From Podarcis bocagei (Eukaryota), in NCBI GenBank assembly GCA_964188305.1, contig OZ076889.1: a DNA stretch of 64,000 bases, one strand, 5' to 3'. Below, piece after piece: positions 2,058 through 50,100 of this stretch. Position 1 is the first letter of the stretch. Each line of letters opens with the position of its first letter. Below the pieces are notes generated by a model that saw only the letters and a list, made by a program, of their open reading frames with translations, was not told where the DNA came from and ran no database searches. Both the position numbers and the translations under genes were made by a program.

Positions 2058-2208
2058 AGAGGCATAGCTCAATCGGTAGAGCATAAGACTCTTAATCTCA
2101 GGGTTGTGGGTTTGAGTCCCACATTGGGCAAGAGGTTCGTGCATCACAGGGGGTTGTACTAAATGACCCCCATGGTACCTCTAACTCTACAAGTCTGTGA
2201 TTCTATGA
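2058..2208 (+). mobile_element. tRNA-Lys(CTT)-derived SINE with CR1-like 3' tail
   Basis: The head tagctcaatcggtagagcataagactcttaatctcagggttgtgggtttgagtcccacattgggc follows tRNA-Lys-CTT. The tail gggttgtactaaatgaccc...tgattctatga resembles the CR1 3' end. Confidence 0.85.
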
Positions 2209-8951: not shown

Positions 8952-9171
8952 ATAAAAAATTCCTTCCAGTAGCACCTTAAAGACCAACTAAGTTAGTTCT
9001 TGGTATGAGCTTTCGTGTGCATGCACACTTCTTCAGATACCAAGAAGTGAAAAAGTGTGCATGCACACGAAAGCTCATACCAAGAACTAACTTAGTTGGT
9101 CTTTAAGGTGCTACTGGAAGGAATTTTTTTATTTTGACTATGGCAGACCAACACGGCTACCTATCTGCAAC
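8952..9171 (+). mobile_element. Penelope-like retroelement remnant (inverted pseudo-LTR ends)
   Basis: ~80-bp inverted repeat (8950-9030 / 9053-9134), a 3' tail atggcagaccaacacggctacc, and a perfect 12-bp flanking duplication tgtattgaggaa at 8940-8951 and 9172-9183. Confidence 0.8.
8997..9046 (-). ncRNA. Minimal type I hammerhead ribozyme motif (PLE-associated)
   Basis: The minus strand reads UUCUUGGUAU-CUGAAGA-A-GUGUGCAUGCACAC-GAAA-GC-UC^AUACCAAGAA. It has CUGANGA and GAAA core boxes, a palindromic stem II, a CUC cleavage triplet and a 10-bp stem I. Confidence 0.75.
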
Positions 9172-24779: not shown

Positions 24780-25295
24780 GATCAATTATTAAACCACTCT
24801 GAGAATTGCAGCTCTGTGTGCGGAATAGGGGTCTCCCAACAGCACACAGAGGGAGGGAGGTGGTGCTGTGGGTTAAACCACAGAGCCTAGGACTTGCCGA
24901 TCAGAAGGCTGGTAGTTCGAATCCCCGCGACGGGGTGAGCTCCCGTTGCTCGGTCCCTGCTCCTGCCAACCTAGCAGTTCGAAAGCACAAAGTGCAAGTA
25001 GATAAATAGGGAAGGTAGACGGCGTTTCCGTGCACTGCTCTGGTTCGCCAGAAGTGGCTTAGTCATACTGGCCACATGACCCGGAAGCTGTACGCCGGCT
25101 CCCTTGGCCAATAAAGTGAGATGAGCGTCGCAACCCCAGAGTCAGTCACGACTAGACCTAATGGTCACGGGTCCCTTTACCTTTAACAGCACACAGCACC
25201 CTTAACAAACTGCAGTTCCCAGGATTCTTTGGGAGAAACCATGTGTGTTTAAAGTGGTATGATACTGCTTTGAATGTACAGTGCAGATGGGGCCT
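24780..25295. mobile_element. Harbinger-like MITE remnant interrupted by a Sauria SINE
   Basis: Body cagcacccttaacaaactgcagttcccaggattctttggg and right TIR tgaatgtacagtgcagatggggcc. Confidence 0.65.
24850..25184 (+). mobile_element. Sauria SINE
   Basis: B box agttcgaatcccc, tail ccctttaccttt, perfect 12-bp TSD aacagcacacag (24838-24849, 25185-25196). Small internal deletion near 25010. Confidence 0.92.
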
Positions 25296-29470: not shown

Positions 29471-29749
29471 TATTGGGAGACACAGTCTTCAAATAACTTG
29501 GACCTGAGTCATTTTAGTCATAACCAGCACTTTGAAGTGTGTCCAGGAATGACCCAATAGCTAGTGGAGCTGCTGTAACAATGAGTAACCTGCTCCAGTC
29601 AACAATCTGGCTTCAGTATCTTGGACCCACTGAAGTTTCTAAACACTTTTCAAAGCTAGCCACACATAGGCATGTATTAACAAAGGCATGTATCACCGTG
29701 GCCAGATTAGACATCTCCAGAAATGGGCACAGCTGGTGCACTGGTGTTA

Positions 29750-30102
29750 ATAATGGTAATGGGACCCCTGACCATTAGGTCCAGTCATGACCGACTCTGG
29801 GGTTGCGGCAATCATCTCGCTTTATTGGCCGAGGGAGCCGGCGTACAGCTTCCAGGTCATGTAGCTAGCATGACTAAGCCGCTTCTGGCGAACCAGAGCA
29901 GTGCACGAAAACGCTGATTACCTTCCCACCGGAGTGGTACCTATTTATCTACTTGCACTTTGACGTGCTTTCGAACTGCTAGGTTGGCAGGAGCAGGGAC
30001 TGAGCAACAGGAGCTCACCCCGCCGCGGGGATTCGAACTGCCAATCTTCTGATTGGCAAGTCCTAGGCTCTGTGGTTTAACCCACAGCGCCACCCGCATC
30101 CC
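29750..30102 (-). mobile_element. Sauria SINE, full length
   Basis: Collinear with 12031-12386. TSD tggtgcactggtgtta / tggtacactggtgtta (15/16). Confidence 0.92.
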
Positions 30103-31974
30103 TGGTACACTGGTGTTATAAATGTGCAAATGCACTCCTTGCCAGGAGTCACACCTAAGCTGCAAACCTGAGTTTTGAGAGGGAGTGTAATCCAGTCCAG
30201 CACAGCTTGAATCCCTATTTCCTGATGTGCCTTTCAACTCTTGTCTTGTCAGTACCGGATTGAACTATAAGTCCATCCTCTCTTTCCCCCTGCTATCATT
30301 TCTACAGAGAATGAGGCCCATTTTCCTACTGCTTTATTTGGCCTGTCTTTAAATCTCTCAAAAAAATGGGGCAGCAGCTGCTATTACTACTTCTAAACTT
30401 GGAAGGTTCTTCTTTATACAAAAAAAAACATACAGCACTGGGCAAGTGAAATGGAACCTCATTTTTCACTGGGTCTCAACTGGAAGCTCTTGCTAATTCA
30501 GTTTAAACTCTTGCTATCCACAGGAATTGTTGGTTTTATAAAAAGTGTTGCAGGACCATTCAAAAATACTGTCTGATTTCTGAACTCTTTCCCCCAACTA
30601 AAGCAACATTCACTGTGGGCTGCTGCGAAGTGGCTTTGTTTTGCATTTCTCCCCAATAGCTTCTATGTACTTAAAGAATAAGAAAACAAATATGGCTATT
30701 TCCAGCCCTGGAAACCACTTAGTTTTACTACTGCATGTAGATAAATTCACTGTGAAATTGAGTTTGCACAGTGATGGCGGGAAGTGGGGAGAAATAGTCC
30801 ATTGAAAGCTGGCAGAAGCTAGCTAATTGGTCTCAAACCAAAGGCTGCAATTCACAGGACATTTACTCCGGAGAAATTCTGTTCTCATCACTAAGACTGC
30901 TCTCGAGCAAGTTGTGTTCTGAATCATTAAAAGACCTGTAATTATACTGCTCAGAATTAACCCAGAAGGCTGTTTTTAAAAGTCCATTTTAAAGTGAATT
31001 TATACTATTATAAGGCCTGTCGACTCTGAGTAATAAAAGAGGAGATGCTAAGTTAAGCTTTGTGTTATCCTGTTTGCTCAGATGGTGCTTATGGTGCTGT
31101 ATCCCGTACAAAAGCACTTTTCAATTTATTTTTATTGCTCTTCTCTAAAAGCATTCCATTAAAGGAATATTACACTGTATGAAGTTTCGAACCACCGTCG
31201 GCAGTTTATTTGCTTGTTTTGCCAGAATGGAATAAACAGTTATTCATGTAACTGTTATTGCTGCTTCATGCTTGCAACACTATAGTTAAGGGTCAATTGC
31301 TGTTTGTTCTTTGTGCCATTGTGCTTCTAAGCCACACATCTTCCTTTTCTTCTCAGGAAATTTTTAACTTGGCTCATTCACCAATCACATTCAGCTGGGA
31401 ATTGGTCTTGAGTTGAAGGTTGCCTGCTGAGAAGGGACTTTGTTGAAGCTGCACAATTTAATTGGCATGTGTAGATATGACTATGAAACTGCACTCTGGT
31501 GGGAGAAGCAAAAAACACAAACTCAAGATTGCATCTCACATAAACTAAGCCAGTGGTGGGGAGTCTGCAGTCCCCAGACTCAACCCATGCAGCCTTTGGG
31601 ATGCTGTACACTTTGTTTTGGGACCACCCCTCTGAGAATCTTTTCTTCTTCAGTGTCATGGCTGGTATTCAACAAAATATCTCCACTAGTGTAATGACTT
31701 TGGACTGCATGATGGCATTTCCCCTCCCTCTCCTGCACATGCCATACCTCTCCCCAGTCCTGGGGTTTTCCCCAACCTCCTGGAGCAGATTTAAGGAGGT
31801 TGTGAGGACATGCAGGAAGAGGAGAGATAGGGGAGGGGTTTTGATGCACTCTTCCTGCAAATCATATTTTCTCTGTCTGTTTCTGTTCCCACTCTCCTAC
31901 TAACACCTTGGCGGTACTTTCTGGTGTTGTGCCTTTTATGCAACTTTTGTGAATGTCCAGGGAATGCTCTGGTC

Positions 31975-44101: not shown

Positions 44102-44574
44102 CCCTTTTTTCTCCAAGGAGCAGCAACACCACATTCCACTCTCAGATATTCACATGCAACATTTCTGCACTGTTCACATGCCTCCAAACATGGTGCTTGC
44201 AGGACTGATTGTTGGAATGGTGCTTTTAGAGACGAGACTCTTTCGAAGGGTGAATATATCCCTGAACTCCCTTCCTGAATGAGGTTAATCTCTGCTCAGT
44301 TAGGGAAGAGTGACTCCTGCCCTAGCAGAAGCAGGTACAGAACCTACTCCTGTATAATCTATGAATCAGGACTATTAGGTTCATATTGGCCAGCTAACAC
44401 CACATAAAACTACACTGATTTAACCCCTTTCTTTTTAATTCAACTCATTTTACCTCAATACTGGACTACTTGTACAAGTGGTTCGCATGCAAGTATTTCT
44501 CAATAGCTTGCATGCAGCTTAACTGATCAACTAACAAGTGAGCTGTCCACGGTTCTGATCTCCTGCAAATTATC

Positions 44575-45009
44575 TGGAAACCAAGCCTTATGAGGAATAC
44601 TGTGGTACCTCGGGTTGCAGACGCTTCAGGTTGCAGATGCGTCACGTTACAAACTCTGCTAACCCAGAAACAATACCTCGGGTTAAGAACTTTGCTTCAG
44701 GATGAGAACAGAAATTGTGTGGCGGCGGCGCAGTGGCAGCAGGAGACTCCATTAGCTAAAGTGGAACCCCAGGTTAAGAACAGTTTCAGGTTAAAAATGG
44801 ACCTCCAGAACGAATTAAGTTATTAACCCGAGGTACCACTGTAGTTTAGAGATTTGGGTATGCTTAACCCAGAGAAGAGAATACTGAGAGGTGATATGAT
44901 AGCCATCTTCAAATATCTAAAGAGCTGTCACATGGAAGATGGAGCAAGCTTGTTTTCTCCTGCTCTGGAGAGTAGGACCTGAATCAATGGATTCAAATTA
45001 CAAGAAAAG
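44575..45009 (+). mobile_element. CR1 LINE ORF2 C-terminal fragment (upstream part)
   Basis: LETKPYEE..LRDLGMLNPEKRILRGDMIAIFKYLKSCHMEDGASLFS...NGFKLQEK, interrupted by a MITE. Confidence 0.85.
44600..44841. mobile_element. Tc1/mariner (Tigger-like) MITE nested in CR1
   Basis: c(t)gtggtacctcgggtt / aacccgaggtaccactg with TA TSD. Confidence 0.9.
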
Positions 45010-45189
45010 TCCAGCTACTTAGCTAAACTAAAATGGCAATGACATTGTTGCTGAAAGGCTAGCTCTGCATCACCGCCATATTATGCTGACTGATCCTGGT
45101 TGAACCAATTCTAGAAGAGAGCTGCCTTCTTCCAGACTACAGCCTGCAGGGACAAACTGCCCAAGCACACAAAAAAGTCCATACAAAAA

Positions 45190-45412
45190 ATCATACTGTA
45201 GAGTTGGAAGGGACCCCCAAGGTTCATCTAGTCCAAACCCCCTGCAATGCATGGATCTCAACTAAATAATCCCTGACAGTGGGTATCCATCCACTGTTTA
45301 AAAATCTCAGATGAAGAAGATGAAGAAGAGTCCACCACCTTGTGAGGCAATCTATTCTGCTGTCCAATAACTCTTACAGTCAGAAAGTTCTTCCTTGTTA
45401 GGAATCTCTTTT
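45190..45412 (-). mobile_element. CR1 LINE terminal 3' part (inverted relative to 44575-45009)
   Basis: Minus strand agattcc..aggaagaactttctgactgtaagag...ggactagatgaaccttgggggtcccttccaactctac is the CR1 3' end. Confidence 0.85.
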
Positions 45413-47145
45413 GTGGAACTACTTTTTCATTAAAGTATTAGTGAGGGAGGTTTGTAGAAGAGCAAAGTCTGTTTTGAAAATATTTGGCACATGTATGTTT
45501 TTAACTGAACTTCCTATCATGCTATGTGTGCACAATTAAGGAACATCTCATGGCATGATGAACATTTTTTACAGAAATTCTGTCTGAAAATGTGAAAAAT
45601 ATCTAAGGCAGGCTTCCTCAGCCTTGGCCCTCCAGATGTTTTTGGCCTACAACTCCCATGATCCCTAGCTAGCAGGACCAGTGGTCAGAGATGATGGGAA
45701 CTGTAGTCTCAAAACATCTGGAGGGCTGAGGTTGAGGAAGCCTAGTCTAAGGTTTTCAAGGTACCTTAACTCTAGCTTGCTGTTCAGAAATTGCATTATT
45801 TTAGTCCAGATATGACACCTGTAAAAAGATTACATGCTGTTCCTATATGCCATTCTATTGGCTGTGCTGAAACATAAATGGTCAATCAATATAATGGTAC
45901 ATGAGAAATTGACACATGAAGTGCTTGCATTCCTGAGTGCCACTGCCTAATCTGAGATAAAATAACACAGTGAATGATATAAGACACTGACAGTGAAGTG
46001 CCGTATTACATGGTGATATAATTATCTGATGACATCACTGGATCCTCACAATTCAAATCAAAATAAATTAAAAATCAAAGTGAAGGCTGGTGAACTCAGC
46101 TATCACATTGAAGACAAAATGCCTTGCCGTTGACTTCAAAAGAATGAGGTTTGCTCCTTCATCTTCTAGTTAAGAGACGTCTGCATTCAAGAATCTCCTC
46201 CCTATGGAGATCAAATAACATCTTAACCTTGTCTTTGGAAAAAAATAATTAGGCTGACAGCTCAGTCCTCAAAGTTCTACATGGGCCAAGTCACATTACA
46301 ACAAATGGGTCTAAGACCAACAGAATACTTTGAAGTATACAGCAGATTTTGTCTTCAATGTGTAGAGAATTGCAACTATATGTATAAAAGATGGTTAGAA
46401 ACCAAGCTGGAACAATTATAATTAAAAATGATAGCTGAGTTCACCAGCCTTCACTTTGATTTTTAATTTATTTTGATTTGAATTGTGAGGATCCAGTGAT
46501 GTCATCAGATAATTATATCACCATGTAATACGGCACTTCACTGTCAGTGTCTTATATCATTCACTGTGTTATTTTATCTCAGATTAGGCAGTGGCACTCA
46601 GGAATGCAAGCACTTCATGTGTCAATTTCTCATGTACCATTATATTGATTGACCATTTATGTTTCAGCACAGCCAATAGAATGGCATATAGGAACAGCAT
46701 GTAATCTTTTTACAGGTGTCATATCTGGACTAAAATAATGCAATTTCTGAACAGCAAGCTAGAGTTAAGGTACCTTGAAAACCTTAGACTAGGCTTCCTC
46801 AACCTCAGCCCTCCAGATGTTTTGAGACTACAGTTCCCATCATCTCTGACCACTGGTCCTGCTAGCTAGGGATCATGGGAGTTGTAGGCCAAAAACATCT
46901 GGAGGGCCGAGGTTGAGGAAGCCTGCCTTAGATATTTTTCACATTTTCAGACAGAATTTCTGTAAAAAATGTTCATCATGCCATGAGATGTTCCTTAATT
47001 GTGCACACATAGCATGATAGGAAGTTCAGTTAAAAACATACATGTGCCAAATATTTTCAAAACAGACTTTGCTCTTCTACAAACCTCCCTCACTAATACT
47101 TTAATGAAAAAGTAGTTCCACAAAAGAGATTCCTAACAAGGAAGA
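45389..47145. repeat. 717-bp inverted duplication (arms 45389-46105 and 46429-47145; 323-bp spacer)
   Basis: Line-by-line reverse-complement comparison gave only two mismatches (45621/46913 and 45625/46909). Confidence 0.97.
45609..45744. mobile_element. hAT-Charlie-like MITE (duplicated passively at 46790-46925)
   Basis: TIRs caggcttcctca / tgaggaagccta. TSD atctaagg / gtctaagg. Confidence 0.88.
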
Positions 47146-50100
47146 CCAACAGAATACTTTGAAGTATACAGCAGATTTCTGAATAAGAAAGCTTGCATTC
47201 CAGTGTTCTTAATATTCTATTACTTACTTCTGAATTTTCCTCAATTTCAGAGTTTAGTAAAGTCATAAGCAGCTAAAATAGCTTGAAAGTATTTGTGGTA
47301 GGTACTGTATCAGATTTGGTCATGTCCCTGCATGTATTCATATATTTCTTTCTGTTCCATATTCATTCTCTCTAACGCAGAGTTTCTGTATTGTGCCCAC
47401 AGTGTGGAGTGAGGAACAGGAGCAAATAACTACACACTAGACCGAAGTGGAATTACATGTCTACAGCTCACAGGGATTGGCATTGCACAGGGCAGAGATT
47501 CATTCATTGGGCAGCTTGACTGCTGACCAATATCTCTATCCCATCCCTAGTGCTGGGTTAACATTGGGAGTGAAATGAATCTCTGGTCAGTCACAGCATA
47601 AACTGTGATCTCATCATACAACTGGAGAATAAATCAGCTGATGCTGACGATGAGGCTTTGAAGTGTCACCCCCAAGACCCCAGGGTATGTCTTCTCCCAC
47701 TTGTCCCTGTTATTCATCCAGTCCAGTGCCACTAGAGAATGGTTCACCTGATTCTGCGTCCAATCTAATGTAACACAACCAATGCAACAAGCCAGACTGA
47801 ATATTTCCAAGAAGTCATCACTGCCAATCCTCAACTGGACAAGGAGAACTGGACAAGGAGACATACGTATATGCACCTTGGAGCTTCTCCTATAACTTGT
47901 ATTTGTGTATCTGTTTCTGATCAGTATGAGCACTCTCCTATATCATAGTTTTAGCATTCATTTTGTATTCTTCTCACTACATCAAAGAGTCTCTTTCTTT
48001 CTCTTTATTAGTAGCCAGTAATATATTAATGCATTCCTTGGTGTGAAATGTGCTCTTAACTATTACCTTGGACACTCATTTAGCTGAATTTGATAGTGAC
48101 AACACATTGACATTGGTAAGGTTAATGATCCAATCTTTTATTTCGTTGAACAAGTTGAACAACATTTAGTACACTGTTTCACGATGTCCTAGAGAGCTGT
48201 CTTGGCTATTACTTTAATCGTGCTATGGCATCTATGCCCTTTAAGTAATTGGCACCATGAAAATATTCTCTAAGTCCTGTCACAATTGATTAGTATTGTG
48301 CTGAATTACAGCAAGATTACTCTCTTTTTTTGCTTTTTACTGGAAGATGGCGAAATTTGATGCTTCAGTAAGTGCAACGTTGTTGATTCCAGTGTAAACC
48401 ACCCAACAAATCCTTACTAGACTTCCAATATCCCACTTAATAACATCACCTGTATCAAGTATGGATACCATTACCCACATCTCACTTACATATTGTGGGC
48501 ACAGAATAATTTGCCAACCAATTCAAAGCACTATGGCTCAACACCACCTTTTGCTATGTTTCTCAACCTTTGACATTGTTGCATGTCTGACACAGTATCT
48601 CAAATCTGATGTATCCCATAGATCAGTGGTTCCCAGCCTTTTCAGTATGGTGATCTACAAGTCCAAATCTACTTGGGATGCTGACCCATTGATTTATTAT
48701 CATATGATTTTTGGACCTTAAGTCTTCAGCAGTTATCAGATTCATGCATTTTAACTGCAGATTTGTCAGTTTTATAAATATGATTTGAGATACCCAAGCT
48801 GTGCTTAACATCTATGAGCATCCTGTGGGCAAGGCTGGGAGAGACAACTGCCATTTATTGTTCTGATTCCCTAAACAAAACAGAGACAAACCTAAGCAAA
48901 ATTAACATCAAAAAGTTTTTAATGCATACTACCAGCACTGACTTCTCTTATGTATCAAATAATCACCCTCCCCCCCCCATTGTACCCTATATTGTGTTTG
49001 TAAATACTAGAGGTATATATAGACACCACTTAATTATTTTACTTTTGTTACCACTTGTGTATTAACCATAGTTTCTATCTTGCAATAAATCACATATTCT
49101 TTGTTTCTAGCCTTTGTTGTCTGATTGCTAATTCCCCCAGCTAAAAGTGTATAAGGGTAATTTGACCTATGATCCCAAAATGCATGTGTCAGTTGAGCAC
49201 ATGCATCTCTGCATACATGAATAAAGGGGTTGGGGGTGGGAAATGGTAACGTGTATCAGCTCACAGAGTTCAAAATGTGGTAAATTAGCCCTGGTGCATT
49301 TGTGTGACTTCCTGCTCATCCGGCTGAGTGGGGATCTGGTCTCCTAAGCCGAAAACCTGCCCTGTATGCACCACTGGGGATGAGTGAACACACTTCACTG
49401 TGCTATGGGTCTGTCTGTCTCATTACCTGACAAGGAATTTCTGTAGGTAACCACTGGCTCTTTAGTATATCATATGGTTTCAAGAACACATCCCTGAATG
49501 TGTGTCCAAAATAAGCATTTTATATGGATAACACACCAATGGAACTGAATATGCCATTTTTGAAAGCAACGTATCCCATTCAATGTGTAGCATAGAGCAA
49601 GCAGGTTGGGAGGGTGATATCCCATTCAGGGCAAGGAGCCAGGAGCAACAGTATTGAAACGATGACATCTGGAAAAAGAAGTGGCATTTGGTGGCATTGA
49701 TTTGGAATCTAGCCAAAGTATTCACTATGGGACTTGGAGACGCAAACACAACAGCATAAAACAAGAAAGACAGATCTTAACGGTGGCTGCTATTTGTCCT
49801 TCCACCACCTTCTCTTTTTCTTTTAAATTACCCTTGATTGTGTAGCATCTGCTCCTTTCAAGCGTGCATATGCTTCTCTTTTTACATCTGCATGTGCCTG
49901 TCTAGGAAAGGCATAAAAGCAACTGAAAAACAAATATCCATCAGAAAGTTTTCTTTCAAAGCCTACTGTAAATCAAATAGGCTGGCAAACAGAGCAGCTC
50001 AAAGCCTTACATACAAGTACCGAGTAATCTTATCTATCTAGGTAATCATTCTGAGAGACCAGTAACATTTTTAGAAGAGGCAAGACCCCAGGAAGAGACT

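What the first reader, a model, noticed from the sequence alone, without database searches (positions are those of the whole stretch)
45389..47178. Near-perfect 717-bp inverted duplication ending in a templated 37-bp insertion (template-switching signature)
45389-46105 is repeated in reverse at 46429-47145 around a 323-bp spacer. It is mostly unique DNA plus a passenger MITE, so it is not a transposon TIR pair. The distal junction runs directly into a direct copy of spacer bases 46313-46349 (aagaccaacagaatactttgaagtatacagcagattt, at 47142-47178) through a 4-nt microhomology (aaga). The proximal junction has a possible aatg microhomology with a 2-nt slip. At least three junctions in series fit FoSTeS/MMBIR-type replication repair. 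If transcribed as intron it would give ~0.7 kb of dsRNA, a possible substrate for editing or endo-siRNA production, and the DNA could be unstable. An assembly or chimeric-read artefact must be excluded.
Basis: partly seen in the sequence, partly recalled or inferred. Interest (0 to 1): 0.75.

Follow-up and report, generated by a model that had tools for sequence, protein, structure and literature searches.

The report
Young template-switch inverted duplication in lizard
A lizard chromosome carries a recent 829-base insertion, made when a DNA polymerase jumped between nearby templates several times; it created a 717-base near-perfect hairpin-forming repeat and is a clean natural example of a known kind of copying error.

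Summary
Arms 45389-46105 and 46429-47145 are reverse complements with 2 mismatches in 717. The 37-nt direct repeat (46313-46349 = 47142-47178) is exact.

The anatomy needs one correction. Bases 46346-46362 are a 17-nt inverted copy of 46104-46120. The inverted copy therefore began right after the first 37-nt repeat and was interrupted by a 66-nt filler of unknown source. The derived piece is one 829-bp insertion (46350-47178) with four junctions. Microhomologies are ATTT, TG (2-nt re-copy) and AAGA. Four-point order is 3-2-4-1.

Read evidence is partial. In one run of the same species (X1, possibly the assembly's own sample), contigs end where a 31-mer graph of this structure must break: 45418, 46105, 46342, 46914 and 47145. 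Arm depth is about 1.5x that of the flanks, which suggests a heterozygote. In a second conspecific run and a sister species, one contig crosses the arm boundary unbroken, so the insert is absent there. No junction-spanning or empty-site contig was displayed.

The variant is real, young and probably polymorphic, and an assembly artefact is unlikely. The mechanism is serial microhomology-mediated template switching, a known class. Nothing shows transcription or dsRNA. I rate it a new member of a known kind, of moderate-to-low interest.

The parts
45389..46105 (+). Left arm: the ancestral source segment that was copied in reverse
   Evidence: Inverted repeat with 2 of 717 mismatches. In runs X2 (same species label) and X4 (sister species) one contig, 45237-45629, runs from the left flank into this arm without a break. 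The flank-arm contiguity is therefore ancestral.
45610..45743 (.). Passenger MITE in the left arm, itself a 57-nt-armed quasi-palindrome, flanked by the direct repeat TCTAAGG at 45602-45608 and 45746-45752
   Evidence: I3, 82% self-complementary. Depth of 10^5-10^6 in all four runs. Both flanking direct repeats lie inside the arm, so the MITE inserted before the duplication.
46104..46120 (+). Source of the 17-nt inverted piece; it holds the landing site of the first switch (AAAT, 46117-46120)
   Evidence: the reverse complement of 46104-46120 equals 46346-46362 exactly.
46106..46349 (+). Ancestral spacer; 46121-46345 would be the loop of a fold-back
   Evidence: X1 contig 46103-46342 at single-copy depth 35.3; geometry.
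46313..46349 (+). First copy of the 37-nt direct repeat (ancestral); departure point 1 at 46349
   Evidence: D3, 100%. The X1 contig stops at 46342, just before the first 31-mer shared with 47142-47172.
46350..47178 (+). The whole derived insertion, 829 bp, made of 13 + 66 + 717 + 33 nt
   Evidence: The start-to-start spacing of the 37-nt repeat is 829. Decomposition.
46350..46362 (-). First stretch of inverted copy (reverse complement of 46104-46116), reached through ATTT microhomology (46346-46349)
   Evidence: In this exact register a 13-nt match has a chance of about 4^-13.
46363..46428 (.). 66-nt AT-rich filler of unknown template, flanked by a 2-nt re-copy (TG at 46361-46362 and 46429-46430)
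   Evidence: No match of 11 nt or more anywhere in the 64-kb window on either strand. It is not a high-copy repeat: the bin 46305-46431 has depth 1.6-49, against 10^5-10^6 for the repeats.
46429..47145 (-). Right arm: the derived inverted copy of 45389-46105
   Evidence: The X1 arm contigs (45720-46105 and 46914-47145) have depth 54-56 against 35-36 in the flanks.
46791..46924 (.). Copied MITE in the right arm; it carries both arm differences (46909, 46913) and is a better palindrome (86% against 82%)
47142..47178 (+). Second copy of the 37-nt repeat: synthesis resumed on the original template at 46313-46316 through AAGA microhomology
   Evidence: The X1 arm contig ends exactly at 47145.

Best explanation
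This is a real, young germline structural variant in a lizard: an 829-bp insertion (46350-47178) produced in one replicative repair episode by serial, microhomology-mediated template switching.

The proposed path is as follows:
- A DNA 3' end growing rightwards along the + strand reached 46349.
- It left its template and paired its last 4 nt (ATTT) with AAAT at 46117-46120, about 230 nt behind. That site lay either on its own displaced strand (snap-back) or on the other parental strand.
- It copied 13 nt backwards, from 46116 to 46104.
- It left again and acquired 66 nt from an unidentified template.
- It re-entered 2 nt back, at 46105, and copied 717 nt backwards to 45389.
- It returned to the original template at 46313 through AAGA, re-copied 46313-46349 and went on into 47179 and beyond.

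The result is a 717-bp inverted repeat with a 323-nt spacer plus a 37-nt direct repeat. In four-point notation the order is 3-2-4-1 with a nested detour.

Shown: the sequence anatomy, the microhomologies, presence of the structure in the reads of one run, and absence of the arm-end branch in a conspecific and in a sister species. Inferred: the order of steps, a single episode, the enzymology (BIR/MMBIR-like or SDSA with snap-back), and heterozygosity.
For: Anatomy:
- The arms differ at 2 of 717 positions and the 37-nt repeat is exact with spacing 829.
- An exact 17-nt inverted match abuts both the end of the first 37-nt repeat and the proximal end of the left arm.
- Junction microhomologies are 4, 2 and 4 nt. 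Random junctions in the local sequence reach 4 nt or more in 2% of trials.
- The breakpoints do not coincide with the MITE ends, and the arms are single-copy.

Reads:
- X1 contigs end at 45418 (30 nt into the arm), 46105, 46342, 46914 (next to the arm variant) and 47145. These are the places where a k=31 graph of this structure must branch.
- Arm contigs have depth 53.9 and 56.5, flanks 35-36, and a haplotype-specific contig 17.7. This fits 3 arm copies per diploid genome.
- X2 (same species label, another study) and X4 (sister species) each have one contig, 45237-45629, passing the arm boundary without a break or a rise in depth.

Literature:
- Events with point 4 before point 1 and inverted 2-to-3 fragments are described in great apes (PMC7954356).
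- Fold-back inverted duplications with spacers and 2-8 bp inverted microhomology are described in humans (PMC3907307).
Against: - No contig spanning a junction and no empty-site joint (46349 joined to 47179) was displayed. The read laying tables were swamped by repeat hits and truncated, so the ancestral state of 46350-46428 is inferred, not seen.
- X1 may be the sample the window was assembled from, so it is not independent of the individual.
- Contig depths are one figure per contig, and the tool warns against reading them as copy number.
- One X1 contig starts at 46103 rather than the predicted 46076. This is unexplained.
- The 66-nt filler has no identified template.
- The ssDNA fold of 46100-46349 shows no pre-existing hairpin that would favour snap-back (z = -1.08).
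- A single episode cannot be told from two steps.
Confidence: 0.78

Rival explanations
1. Two-step history. A simple template-switch inverted duplication first copied 45389-46120 in one piece. Later a separate 64-66-nt insertion entered the right copy, or a 64-66-nt microhomology (CA/TG) deletion occurred in the left copy.
For: The 2-nt TG duplication around the filler could be the scar of an independent small insertion or deletion. The two arm differences show that at least some change followed or accompanied the event.
Against: The variant looks very young: heterozygous in X1 and absent in X2. That leaves little time for a second rearrangement at the very tip of the copy. Under the deletion version, an X1 contig should start at 46104, but the observed start is 46103. 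Complex junctions with inserted stretches are usual in this class (PMC3907307 reports five of 21 junctions with insertions).
Confidence: 0.12
2. One reading: the whole 323-nt spacer, including 46350-46428, is ancestral. Only the right arm plus a 37-nt templated patch (46429-47178) was inserted.
For: It needs one junction fewer and no filler of unknown origin. The anatomy is compatible with it.
Against: It leaves the exact 17-nt inverted match 46346-46362 / 46104-46120 as coincidence, although that match sits flush against both the 37-nt repeat and the arm end. It also needs an extra junction at 47178/47179.
Confidence: 0.05
3. Assembly or library artefact: a chimeric or palindromic long read, or a collapsed or misjoined haplotype. 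No such DNA would exist in the animal.
For: Only one individual (X1, possibly the assembly's source) shows it, and the conspecific X2 lacks it. No junction-spanning record was displayed.
Against: Five X1 contig ends fall to the base where this structure predicts, including a break at the arm variant 46913. Arm depth is about 1.5x the flanks rather than 0.5x, and the bin holding the filler is well covered in X1 (48.9). Missed-adapter palindromes have no 323-nt spacer, filler or 37-nt direct repeat. The two arm differences are not expected from a chimeric read.
Confidence: 0.03
4. Retroelement-enzyme by-product. Staggered nicks 37 nt apart by a LINE or Penelope endonuclease gave a long target-site duplication, and a reverse transcriptase or repair polymerase copied host flank backwards, as in twin-priming or flank-capture events.
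For: The insert is bracketed by a 37-nt direct repeat like a long TSD. The filler ends in AAAAA. Earlier scan notes report retroelement insertions in this genome with inverted copies of host flank (s1-341794 and s1-340306; not checked by me).
Against: There is no retroelement body. The A-run abuts the arm rather than the direct repeat. By read depth the filler is not a high-copy sequence. Both outer junctions show 4-nt microhomology typical of DNA-templated switching.
Confidence: 0.04
5. Foldback-type transposon or a pair of TIRs, or alternative transposition of the hAT-like MITE.
For: Long terminal inverted arms and a MITE inside them.
Against: The arms are single-copy in four genomes. No target-site duplication flanks 45389-47145. 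The breakpoints are 220-360 nt away from the MITE ends. The arm tip lies inside an older repeat fragment.
Confidence: 0.01

Closest known systems
Short-range template switch mutations, four-point model (Loytynoja and Goldman 2017; Walker et al. 2021, PMC7954356)
   Same: A reverse-complement 2-to-3 fragment copied from nearby sequence is set between collinear L-to-1 and 4-to-R fragments. It creates a perfect inverted repeat. Point 4 precedes point 1, giving a direct duplication, which the paper links to D-loop/BIR-like re-invasion. Point 2 precedes point 1, so intra-strand snap-back is allowed.
   Different: Scale: 730 nt copied, against a median of 12 and a maximum of 128 nt in the great-ape gold-standard set. 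There is also a nested second detour with a 66-nt filler from an unidentified template.
FoSTeS/MMBIR complex rearrangements (Lee 2007; Hastings 2009; from my own knowledge, and reference lists of PMC7954356)
   Same: Several junctions in cis, 2-4-nt microhomology at each resolvable junction, templated insertions, and a mix of direct and inverted copies.
   Different: Those are usually kilobase-to-megabase copy-number variants ascertained in patients. This one is under a kilobase, non-genic as far as seen, and segregating in a wild lizard.
Fold-back inverted duplications after a double-strand break (Hermetz et al. 2014, PMC3907307; yeast Pol delta-dependent events, PMC10622511; short foldback insertions at breaks, PMC11724301)
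   Same: An inverted duplication separated from its source by a single-copy spacer, which is the fold-back loop. There is a short inverted microhomology (4 nt here, 2-8 bp there) at the spacer/inverted-copy junction, and junctional insertions occur in a minority of cases.
   Different: The human events are terminal, megabase-scale, and pass through a dicentric chromosome and a terminal deletion. Here synthesis stopped after 717 nt and returned to the original template, so nothing is lost and the event is interstitial. The yeast foldback insertions are mostly about 5-34 bp.
DUP-TRP/INV-DUP and small inverted triplications (PMC11293582; PMC13334657)
   Same: Iterative template switches that give an inverted middle copy, with short spacers and junction microhomology. 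Small inverted triplications are of a similar size order (about 150-nt units).
   Different: No segment is triplicated here. The inverted segment (45389-46116) and the directly duplicated segment (46313-46349) do not overlap.
De novo RNA hairpins and miRNAs created by template switching (PMC10710096)
   Same: One mutational event creates a perfect hairpin-forming locus from non-hairpin DNA.
   Different: Those are stems of about 22 nt scale with evidence of expression. Here the stem is 717 bp and no transcription is shown.

Membership tests
Template switch event, four-point model | A 2-to-3 fragment that is the reverse complement of sequence close by | tested here: met
   717 nt plus 13 nt are reverse complements of 45389-46116.
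Template switch event, four-point model | L-to-1 and 4-to-R are collinear with the ancestral sequence, with direction set by an outgroup | tested here: inconclusive
   Unbroken contigs 45237-45629 in X2 and X4 show that the left flank and left arm are ancestral. The empty-site joint 46349|47179 was not displayed.
FoSTeS/MMBIR | Microhomology at breakpoint junctions above chance | tested here: met
   ATTT, AAGA and TG. P(4 nt or more) = 0.02 per random local junction.
FoSTeS/MMBIR | Two or more junctions in cis joining nearby segments in mixed orientation | tested here: met
   Four junctions within 829 bp.
FoSTeS/MMBIR | Origin in replication or break-induced replication (Pol delta/Pif1-type dependence) | not testable with these tools
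   This needs genetics or mutation-accumulation data.
Fold-back inverted duplication (DSB, dicentric, breakage-fusion-bridge) | Single-copy spacer with inverted microhomology at the spacer/inverted junction | tested here: met
   Loop 46121-46345, with ATTT/AAAT at its two ends.
Fold-back inverted duplication (DSB, dicentric, breakage-fusion-bridge) | Adjacent terminal deletion, translocation or ring, meaning resolution through a dicentric | tested here: not met
   The sequence continues collinearly into 47179 and beyond after a 37-nt re-copy, and nothing is lost.
DUP-TRP/INV-DUP or small inverted triplication | A segment present three times, with the middle copy inverted | tested here: not met
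   The inverted (45389-46116) and direct (46313-46349) duplicated segments are disjoint.
Transposon with terminal inverted repeats or foldback element | Target-site duplication and multiple genomic copies | tested here: not met
   No TSD at 45388/47146. The arms are at single-copy depth outside the MITE.
Target-primed reverse transcription insertion | Retroelement or RNA-derived body with a 3' A-tail next to the target-site duplication | tested here: not met
   The only non-local part is a low-copy 66-nt filler whose A5 abuts the arm, not the 37-nt repeat.

The most novel reading that the evidence does not exclude
The event created, in one step, a newborn long-hairpin RNA locus. The stem has 716 of 717 positions paired with their mirror partner (perfect runs of 232 and 480 bp). 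If it lies in a transcribed region it could already feed Dicer or ADAR while still segregating in the population. Separately, the neighbourhood may be a recurrent template-switch hotspot: a more distant species shows an independent inversion-type breakpoint 24 nt from the arm end. Neither idea is excluded and neither has direct support.
Probability: 0.06. Interest if true: 0.6.

Novelty: new member of a known kind. Interest (0 to 1): 0.35.

Why it matters
This is an unusually legible natural example of a multi-jump replication error at an intermediate scale of 0.7 kb. That lies between the events of up to about 128 nt catalogued in primates and the kilobase-to-megabase rearrangements studied in patients. 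It appears to have been caught while still polymorphic, so every junction is intact.

It shows that one event can create a long, near-perfect inverted repeat from unique DNA in a vertebrate germline. That bears on how hairpin RNA loci and fragile palindromes arise. It does not reveal a new mechanism.

Tried and rejected
- **Source of the 66-nt filler.** Exact-match scans of the whole window on both strands found nothing of 11 nt or more. Only 8-10-nt AT-rich matches turned up, with no clear meaning. The scan's own index was blank, which means nothing.
- **Pre-existing snap-back hairpin.** Folding ssDNA 46100-46349 gave z = -1.08, so none is indicated. An 8-nt inverted match (46133-46140 / 46328-46335), seen by eye and not verified by a tool, did not enter the minimum-energy fold.
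- **Gene context.** The 10 longest ORFs have no Pfam match. Rfam gives only a tRNA-like hit at 2065-2122. Whether the locus is intronic is unknown.
- **Direction of the two arm differences.** Only this MITE and its copy are in the window, so there is no family consensus. The outgroup letters at 45621 and 45625 were hidden by MITE depth.
- **Read laying.** The joint and piece tables were therefore truncated before the informative records. A narrower stretch would have been better.
- **Rejected readings.** Transposon TIRs, alternative transposition of the MITE, and DUP-TRP/INV-DUP (see the membership tests).
Full report
**1. Observation**

Reading 45200-47400 and the repeat finder confirm an inverted repeat, with arms 45389-46105 and 46429-47145. 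A base-by-base mirror comparison gives 715 of 717 matches. The two mismatches are at 45621 (G; the right arm implies A) and 45625 (T; the right arm implies C). Complementarity collapses outside these limits.

The 37-nt direct repeat 46313-46349 = 47142-47178 is exact. Its first four bases (AAGA) are also the last four of the right arm. No other inverted pair in the 64-kb window comes near this length and identity. The others are an 82-nt palindrome at 8954-9129 and two older transposon pairs at 88-92%.

**2. Corrected anatomy**

Bases 46346-46362 are an exact reverse complement of 46104-46120. This 17-mer sits flush against the end of the first 37-nt repeat on one side. Its source sits flush against, and overlaps by 2 nt, the proximal end of the left arm. 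In that fixed register the 13 nt beyond the microhomology have a chance of about 4^-13.

So the inverted copy did not begin at 46429. It began at 46350, ran 13 nt (46116 down to 46104), was interrupted by 66 nt (46363-46428), and resumed at 46105, re-copying TG. The derived DNA is therefore one block of 829 bp, 46350-47178. That equals the start-to-start spacing of the 37-nt repeat. It is composed of 13 + 66 + 717 + 33 nt.

The inferred ancestral sequence runs from 46349 straight into 47179.

Junction microhomologies:

| Junction | Position | Microhomology |
|---|---|---|
| J1 | 46349/46350 | ATTT |
| J2/J3 | 46362/46363 and 46428/46429 (either side of the filler) | TG, re-copied on re-entry |
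| J4 | 47145/47146 | AAGA |

In 200,000 random junction pairs drawn from the local sequence, 4 nt or more occurred in 2%.

The filler has no match of 11 nt or more anywhere in the window on either strand.

**3. The arms are not a mobile element**

Depth of public-run contigs is single-copy across the arms, with two exceptions. One is the MITE (45610-45743, copy 46791-46924), at depth 10^5-10^6. The other is the distal ~25 nt, which belong to an older repeat reaching in from the left flank; the bin 45289-45415 is raised and 45416-45542 is not.

The MITE and its flanking direct repeat TCTAAGG (45602-45608, 45746-45752) lie wholly inside the arm, so it is a passenger. None of the four breakpoints coincides with a MITE end, and no target-site duplication flanks 45389-47145.

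**4. Is it real, and which state is ancestral?**

The run search found holders in five related organisms: A at 0.83-0.87 of sampled words, B-D at about 0.6, and E at about 0.43. Earlier scan notes call the genome a lizard.

I laid X1 and X2 (both organism A, different studies), X4 (B) and X11 (E) on 44400-48200. All are Logan contigs from 31-mer graphs, so a repeat longer than 30 nt must break contigs at predictable bases.

In X1 the displayed contigs are:
- 45237-45418, which ends 30 nt into the arm;
- 45720-46105, which ends at the arm's proximal end;
- 46103-46342, which ends just before the first 31-mer shared by the two 37-nt copies;
- 46914-47145, which starts one base past the arm variant 46913 and ends at the arm's distal end.

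Five ends therefore match the window's structure to the base. One, the start at 46103 instead of 46076, does not, and I cannot explain it.

The arm contigs have depth 53.9 and 56.5. Flank and spacer contigs have 35-36. A haplotype-specific contig with the alternative alleles at 45015, 45018 and 45022 has 17.7. That is the pattern of three arm copies per diploid genome, meaning a heterozygous insertion. The tool warns that contig depths are coarse, so I treat this as suggestive.

The bin containing the filler is well covered in X1 (48.9) and poorly in the others (1.6-5.1).

In X2 and X4, by contrast, a single contig spans 45237-45629. It crosses the arm's distal boundary with no break and no rise in depth (19.8 against 18.4 in X2). 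With the insertion present, the 31-mer at 45389-45419 would have two neighbours and the contig would stop at 45418, as it does in X1. So the insertion is absent in a conspecific and in a sister species. The left arm is the ancestral copy, and the variant is young and probably polymorphic.

Limits of this evidence:
- The tables were flooded by repeat hits and cut off (about 157,000 pieces and 478 joints were not shown).
- I saw no junction-spanning contig and no empty-site joint.
- X1 may be the assembled individual.

**5. The two arm differences**

Both differences lie 4 nt apart in one arm of the MITE. The right-arm version reads AACCTCGG, the left AGCCTTGG, and the MITE's other arm AACCTCAG. 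The copied MITE is thus the better palindrome, at 86% against 82%. There are two readings:
- The left arm changed after the event, or carries SNP alleles brought in by recombination with empty haplotypes. One change is a CpG-to-TpG transition.
- The copy was altered during synthesis by a short switch to the MITE's other arm, a quasi-palindrome correction in the sense of Ripley 1982 as cited in PMC7954356.

The contigs of X2 (2 differences) and X4 (5 differences) cover these sites. Their letters were not listed, because MITE depth swamps the 10% filter. The question stays open.

**6. Mechanism**

The simplest path is a growing 3' end that makes four switches:
- It leaves at 46349.
- It lands 229 nt back on the complementary sense through ATTT and copies 13 nt.
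- It detours to an unknown template for 66 nt.
- It re-enters 2 nt back and copies 717 nt.
- It returns to the first template 37 nt upstream of its departure through AAGA and continues.

In the four-point notation of PMC7954356 the points are 1 = 46349, 2 = 46116, 3 = 45389 and 4 = 46313, giving the order 3-2-4-1. That paper states that point 2 preceding point 1 permits intra-strand (snap-back) as well as inter-strand switching. [quoted passage not shown] The mirror description, with the fork moving leftwards, cannot be excluded from sequence alone.

A break-repair version is equally compatible. A resected 3' tail ending at 46349 folds back on itself and is extended towards the resection limit near 45389. 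It then invades the sister chromatid at 46313. The two versions differ in enzymology, not in product.

Folding the ancestral tail 46100-46349 as ssDNA shows no special structure (z = -1.08). The landing therefore seems to rest on the 4-nt microhomology alone.

**7. Comparison with known classes**

- **Great-ape template switches.** These have a median copied length of 12 nt and a maximum of 128. This event is about six times the maximum, though that method targets short events.
- **Human fold-back inverted duplications.** These have single-copy spacers of 766 bp to 70 kb and 2-8 bp of inverted microhomology, with insertions at five of 21 junctions. They end in terminal deletions via a dicentric, which is not the case here.
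- **Small inverted triplications.** These average 148/160/148 bp. No segment is triplicated here.

The event thus works like MMBIR/FoSTeS and the four-point template-switch model. I file it there as a new member, not as a new kind.

**8. Consequences**

As RNA, 45389-47145 would fold at -1431 kcal/mol with 716 of 717 mirror pairs, giving perfect runs of 232 and 480 bp. No run on record as RNA holds the stretch. The 'RNA?' rows share 6-7% of words, likely the repeats. The ten longest ORFs of the window have no Pfam match, and I could not establish whether the locus is intronic. The dsRNA, editing and siRNA ideas are therefore untested.

On DNA instability, my own knowledge of yeast and mammalian work (not tested here) is that a 323-nt spacer greatly reduces hairpin or cruciform extrusion compared with spacer-less palindromes.

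**9. Verdict**

- An artefact is unlikely but not formally excluded for lack of displayed spanning records.
- Novelty: new member of a known kind. Interest: 0.35.

The scan has noted other template-switch-like patchworks in this genome. I did not check them, and they do not bear on the score.

Noticed in passing
window 45005-45636 (run X11, organism E): One 446-nt contig of the most distant relative joins the reverse complement of 45005-45216 directly to 45413-45636. A second contig (45215-45407) runs on into 24 unmatched letters. Organism E therefore differs from the window by an inversion-type rearrangement of about 408 bp. One breakpoint lies 24 nt from the arm end at 45389. The polarity is unknown.
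   Followed up: partly
window 8954-9129: A second young palindrome with 82-nt arms (8954-9035 / 9048-9129), 99% complementary, and a 12-nt spacer. This is the stretch another first-stage note links to a hammerhead ribozyme (s1-349645).
   Followed up: no
window 2065-2122: The only Rfam hit of the window at gathering score: a tRNA-like match, 42.3 bits, model positions 8-63. It is probably the head of a tRNA-derived SINE.
   Followed up: no
window 24850-25192 and 29744-30103: Two adjacent inverted pairs (139 and 184 nt, 88-92% complementary) about 4.6-5 kb apart. They look like older repeat copies in opposite orientation.
   Followed up: no
window 45015, 45018, 45022, 45354: Run X1 is heterozygous here. 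The alternative alleles (T, T, C, G) are also the letters seen in organism E, and at 45354 in organism B too. The assembled haplotype thus carries the derived alleles next to the insertion.
   Followed up: partly
window 46103: The X1 spacer contig starts at 46103, not at 46076 as the 31-mer logic predicts. This hints at a further small difference between the two haplotypes at about 46102.
   Followed up: no
window 44527-45034 and 45162-45415: Very high-copy repeats (contig depth 10^4-10^6 in all four lizard runs) lie just left of the arm. The distal tip of the arm lies inside the second one.
   Followed up: no
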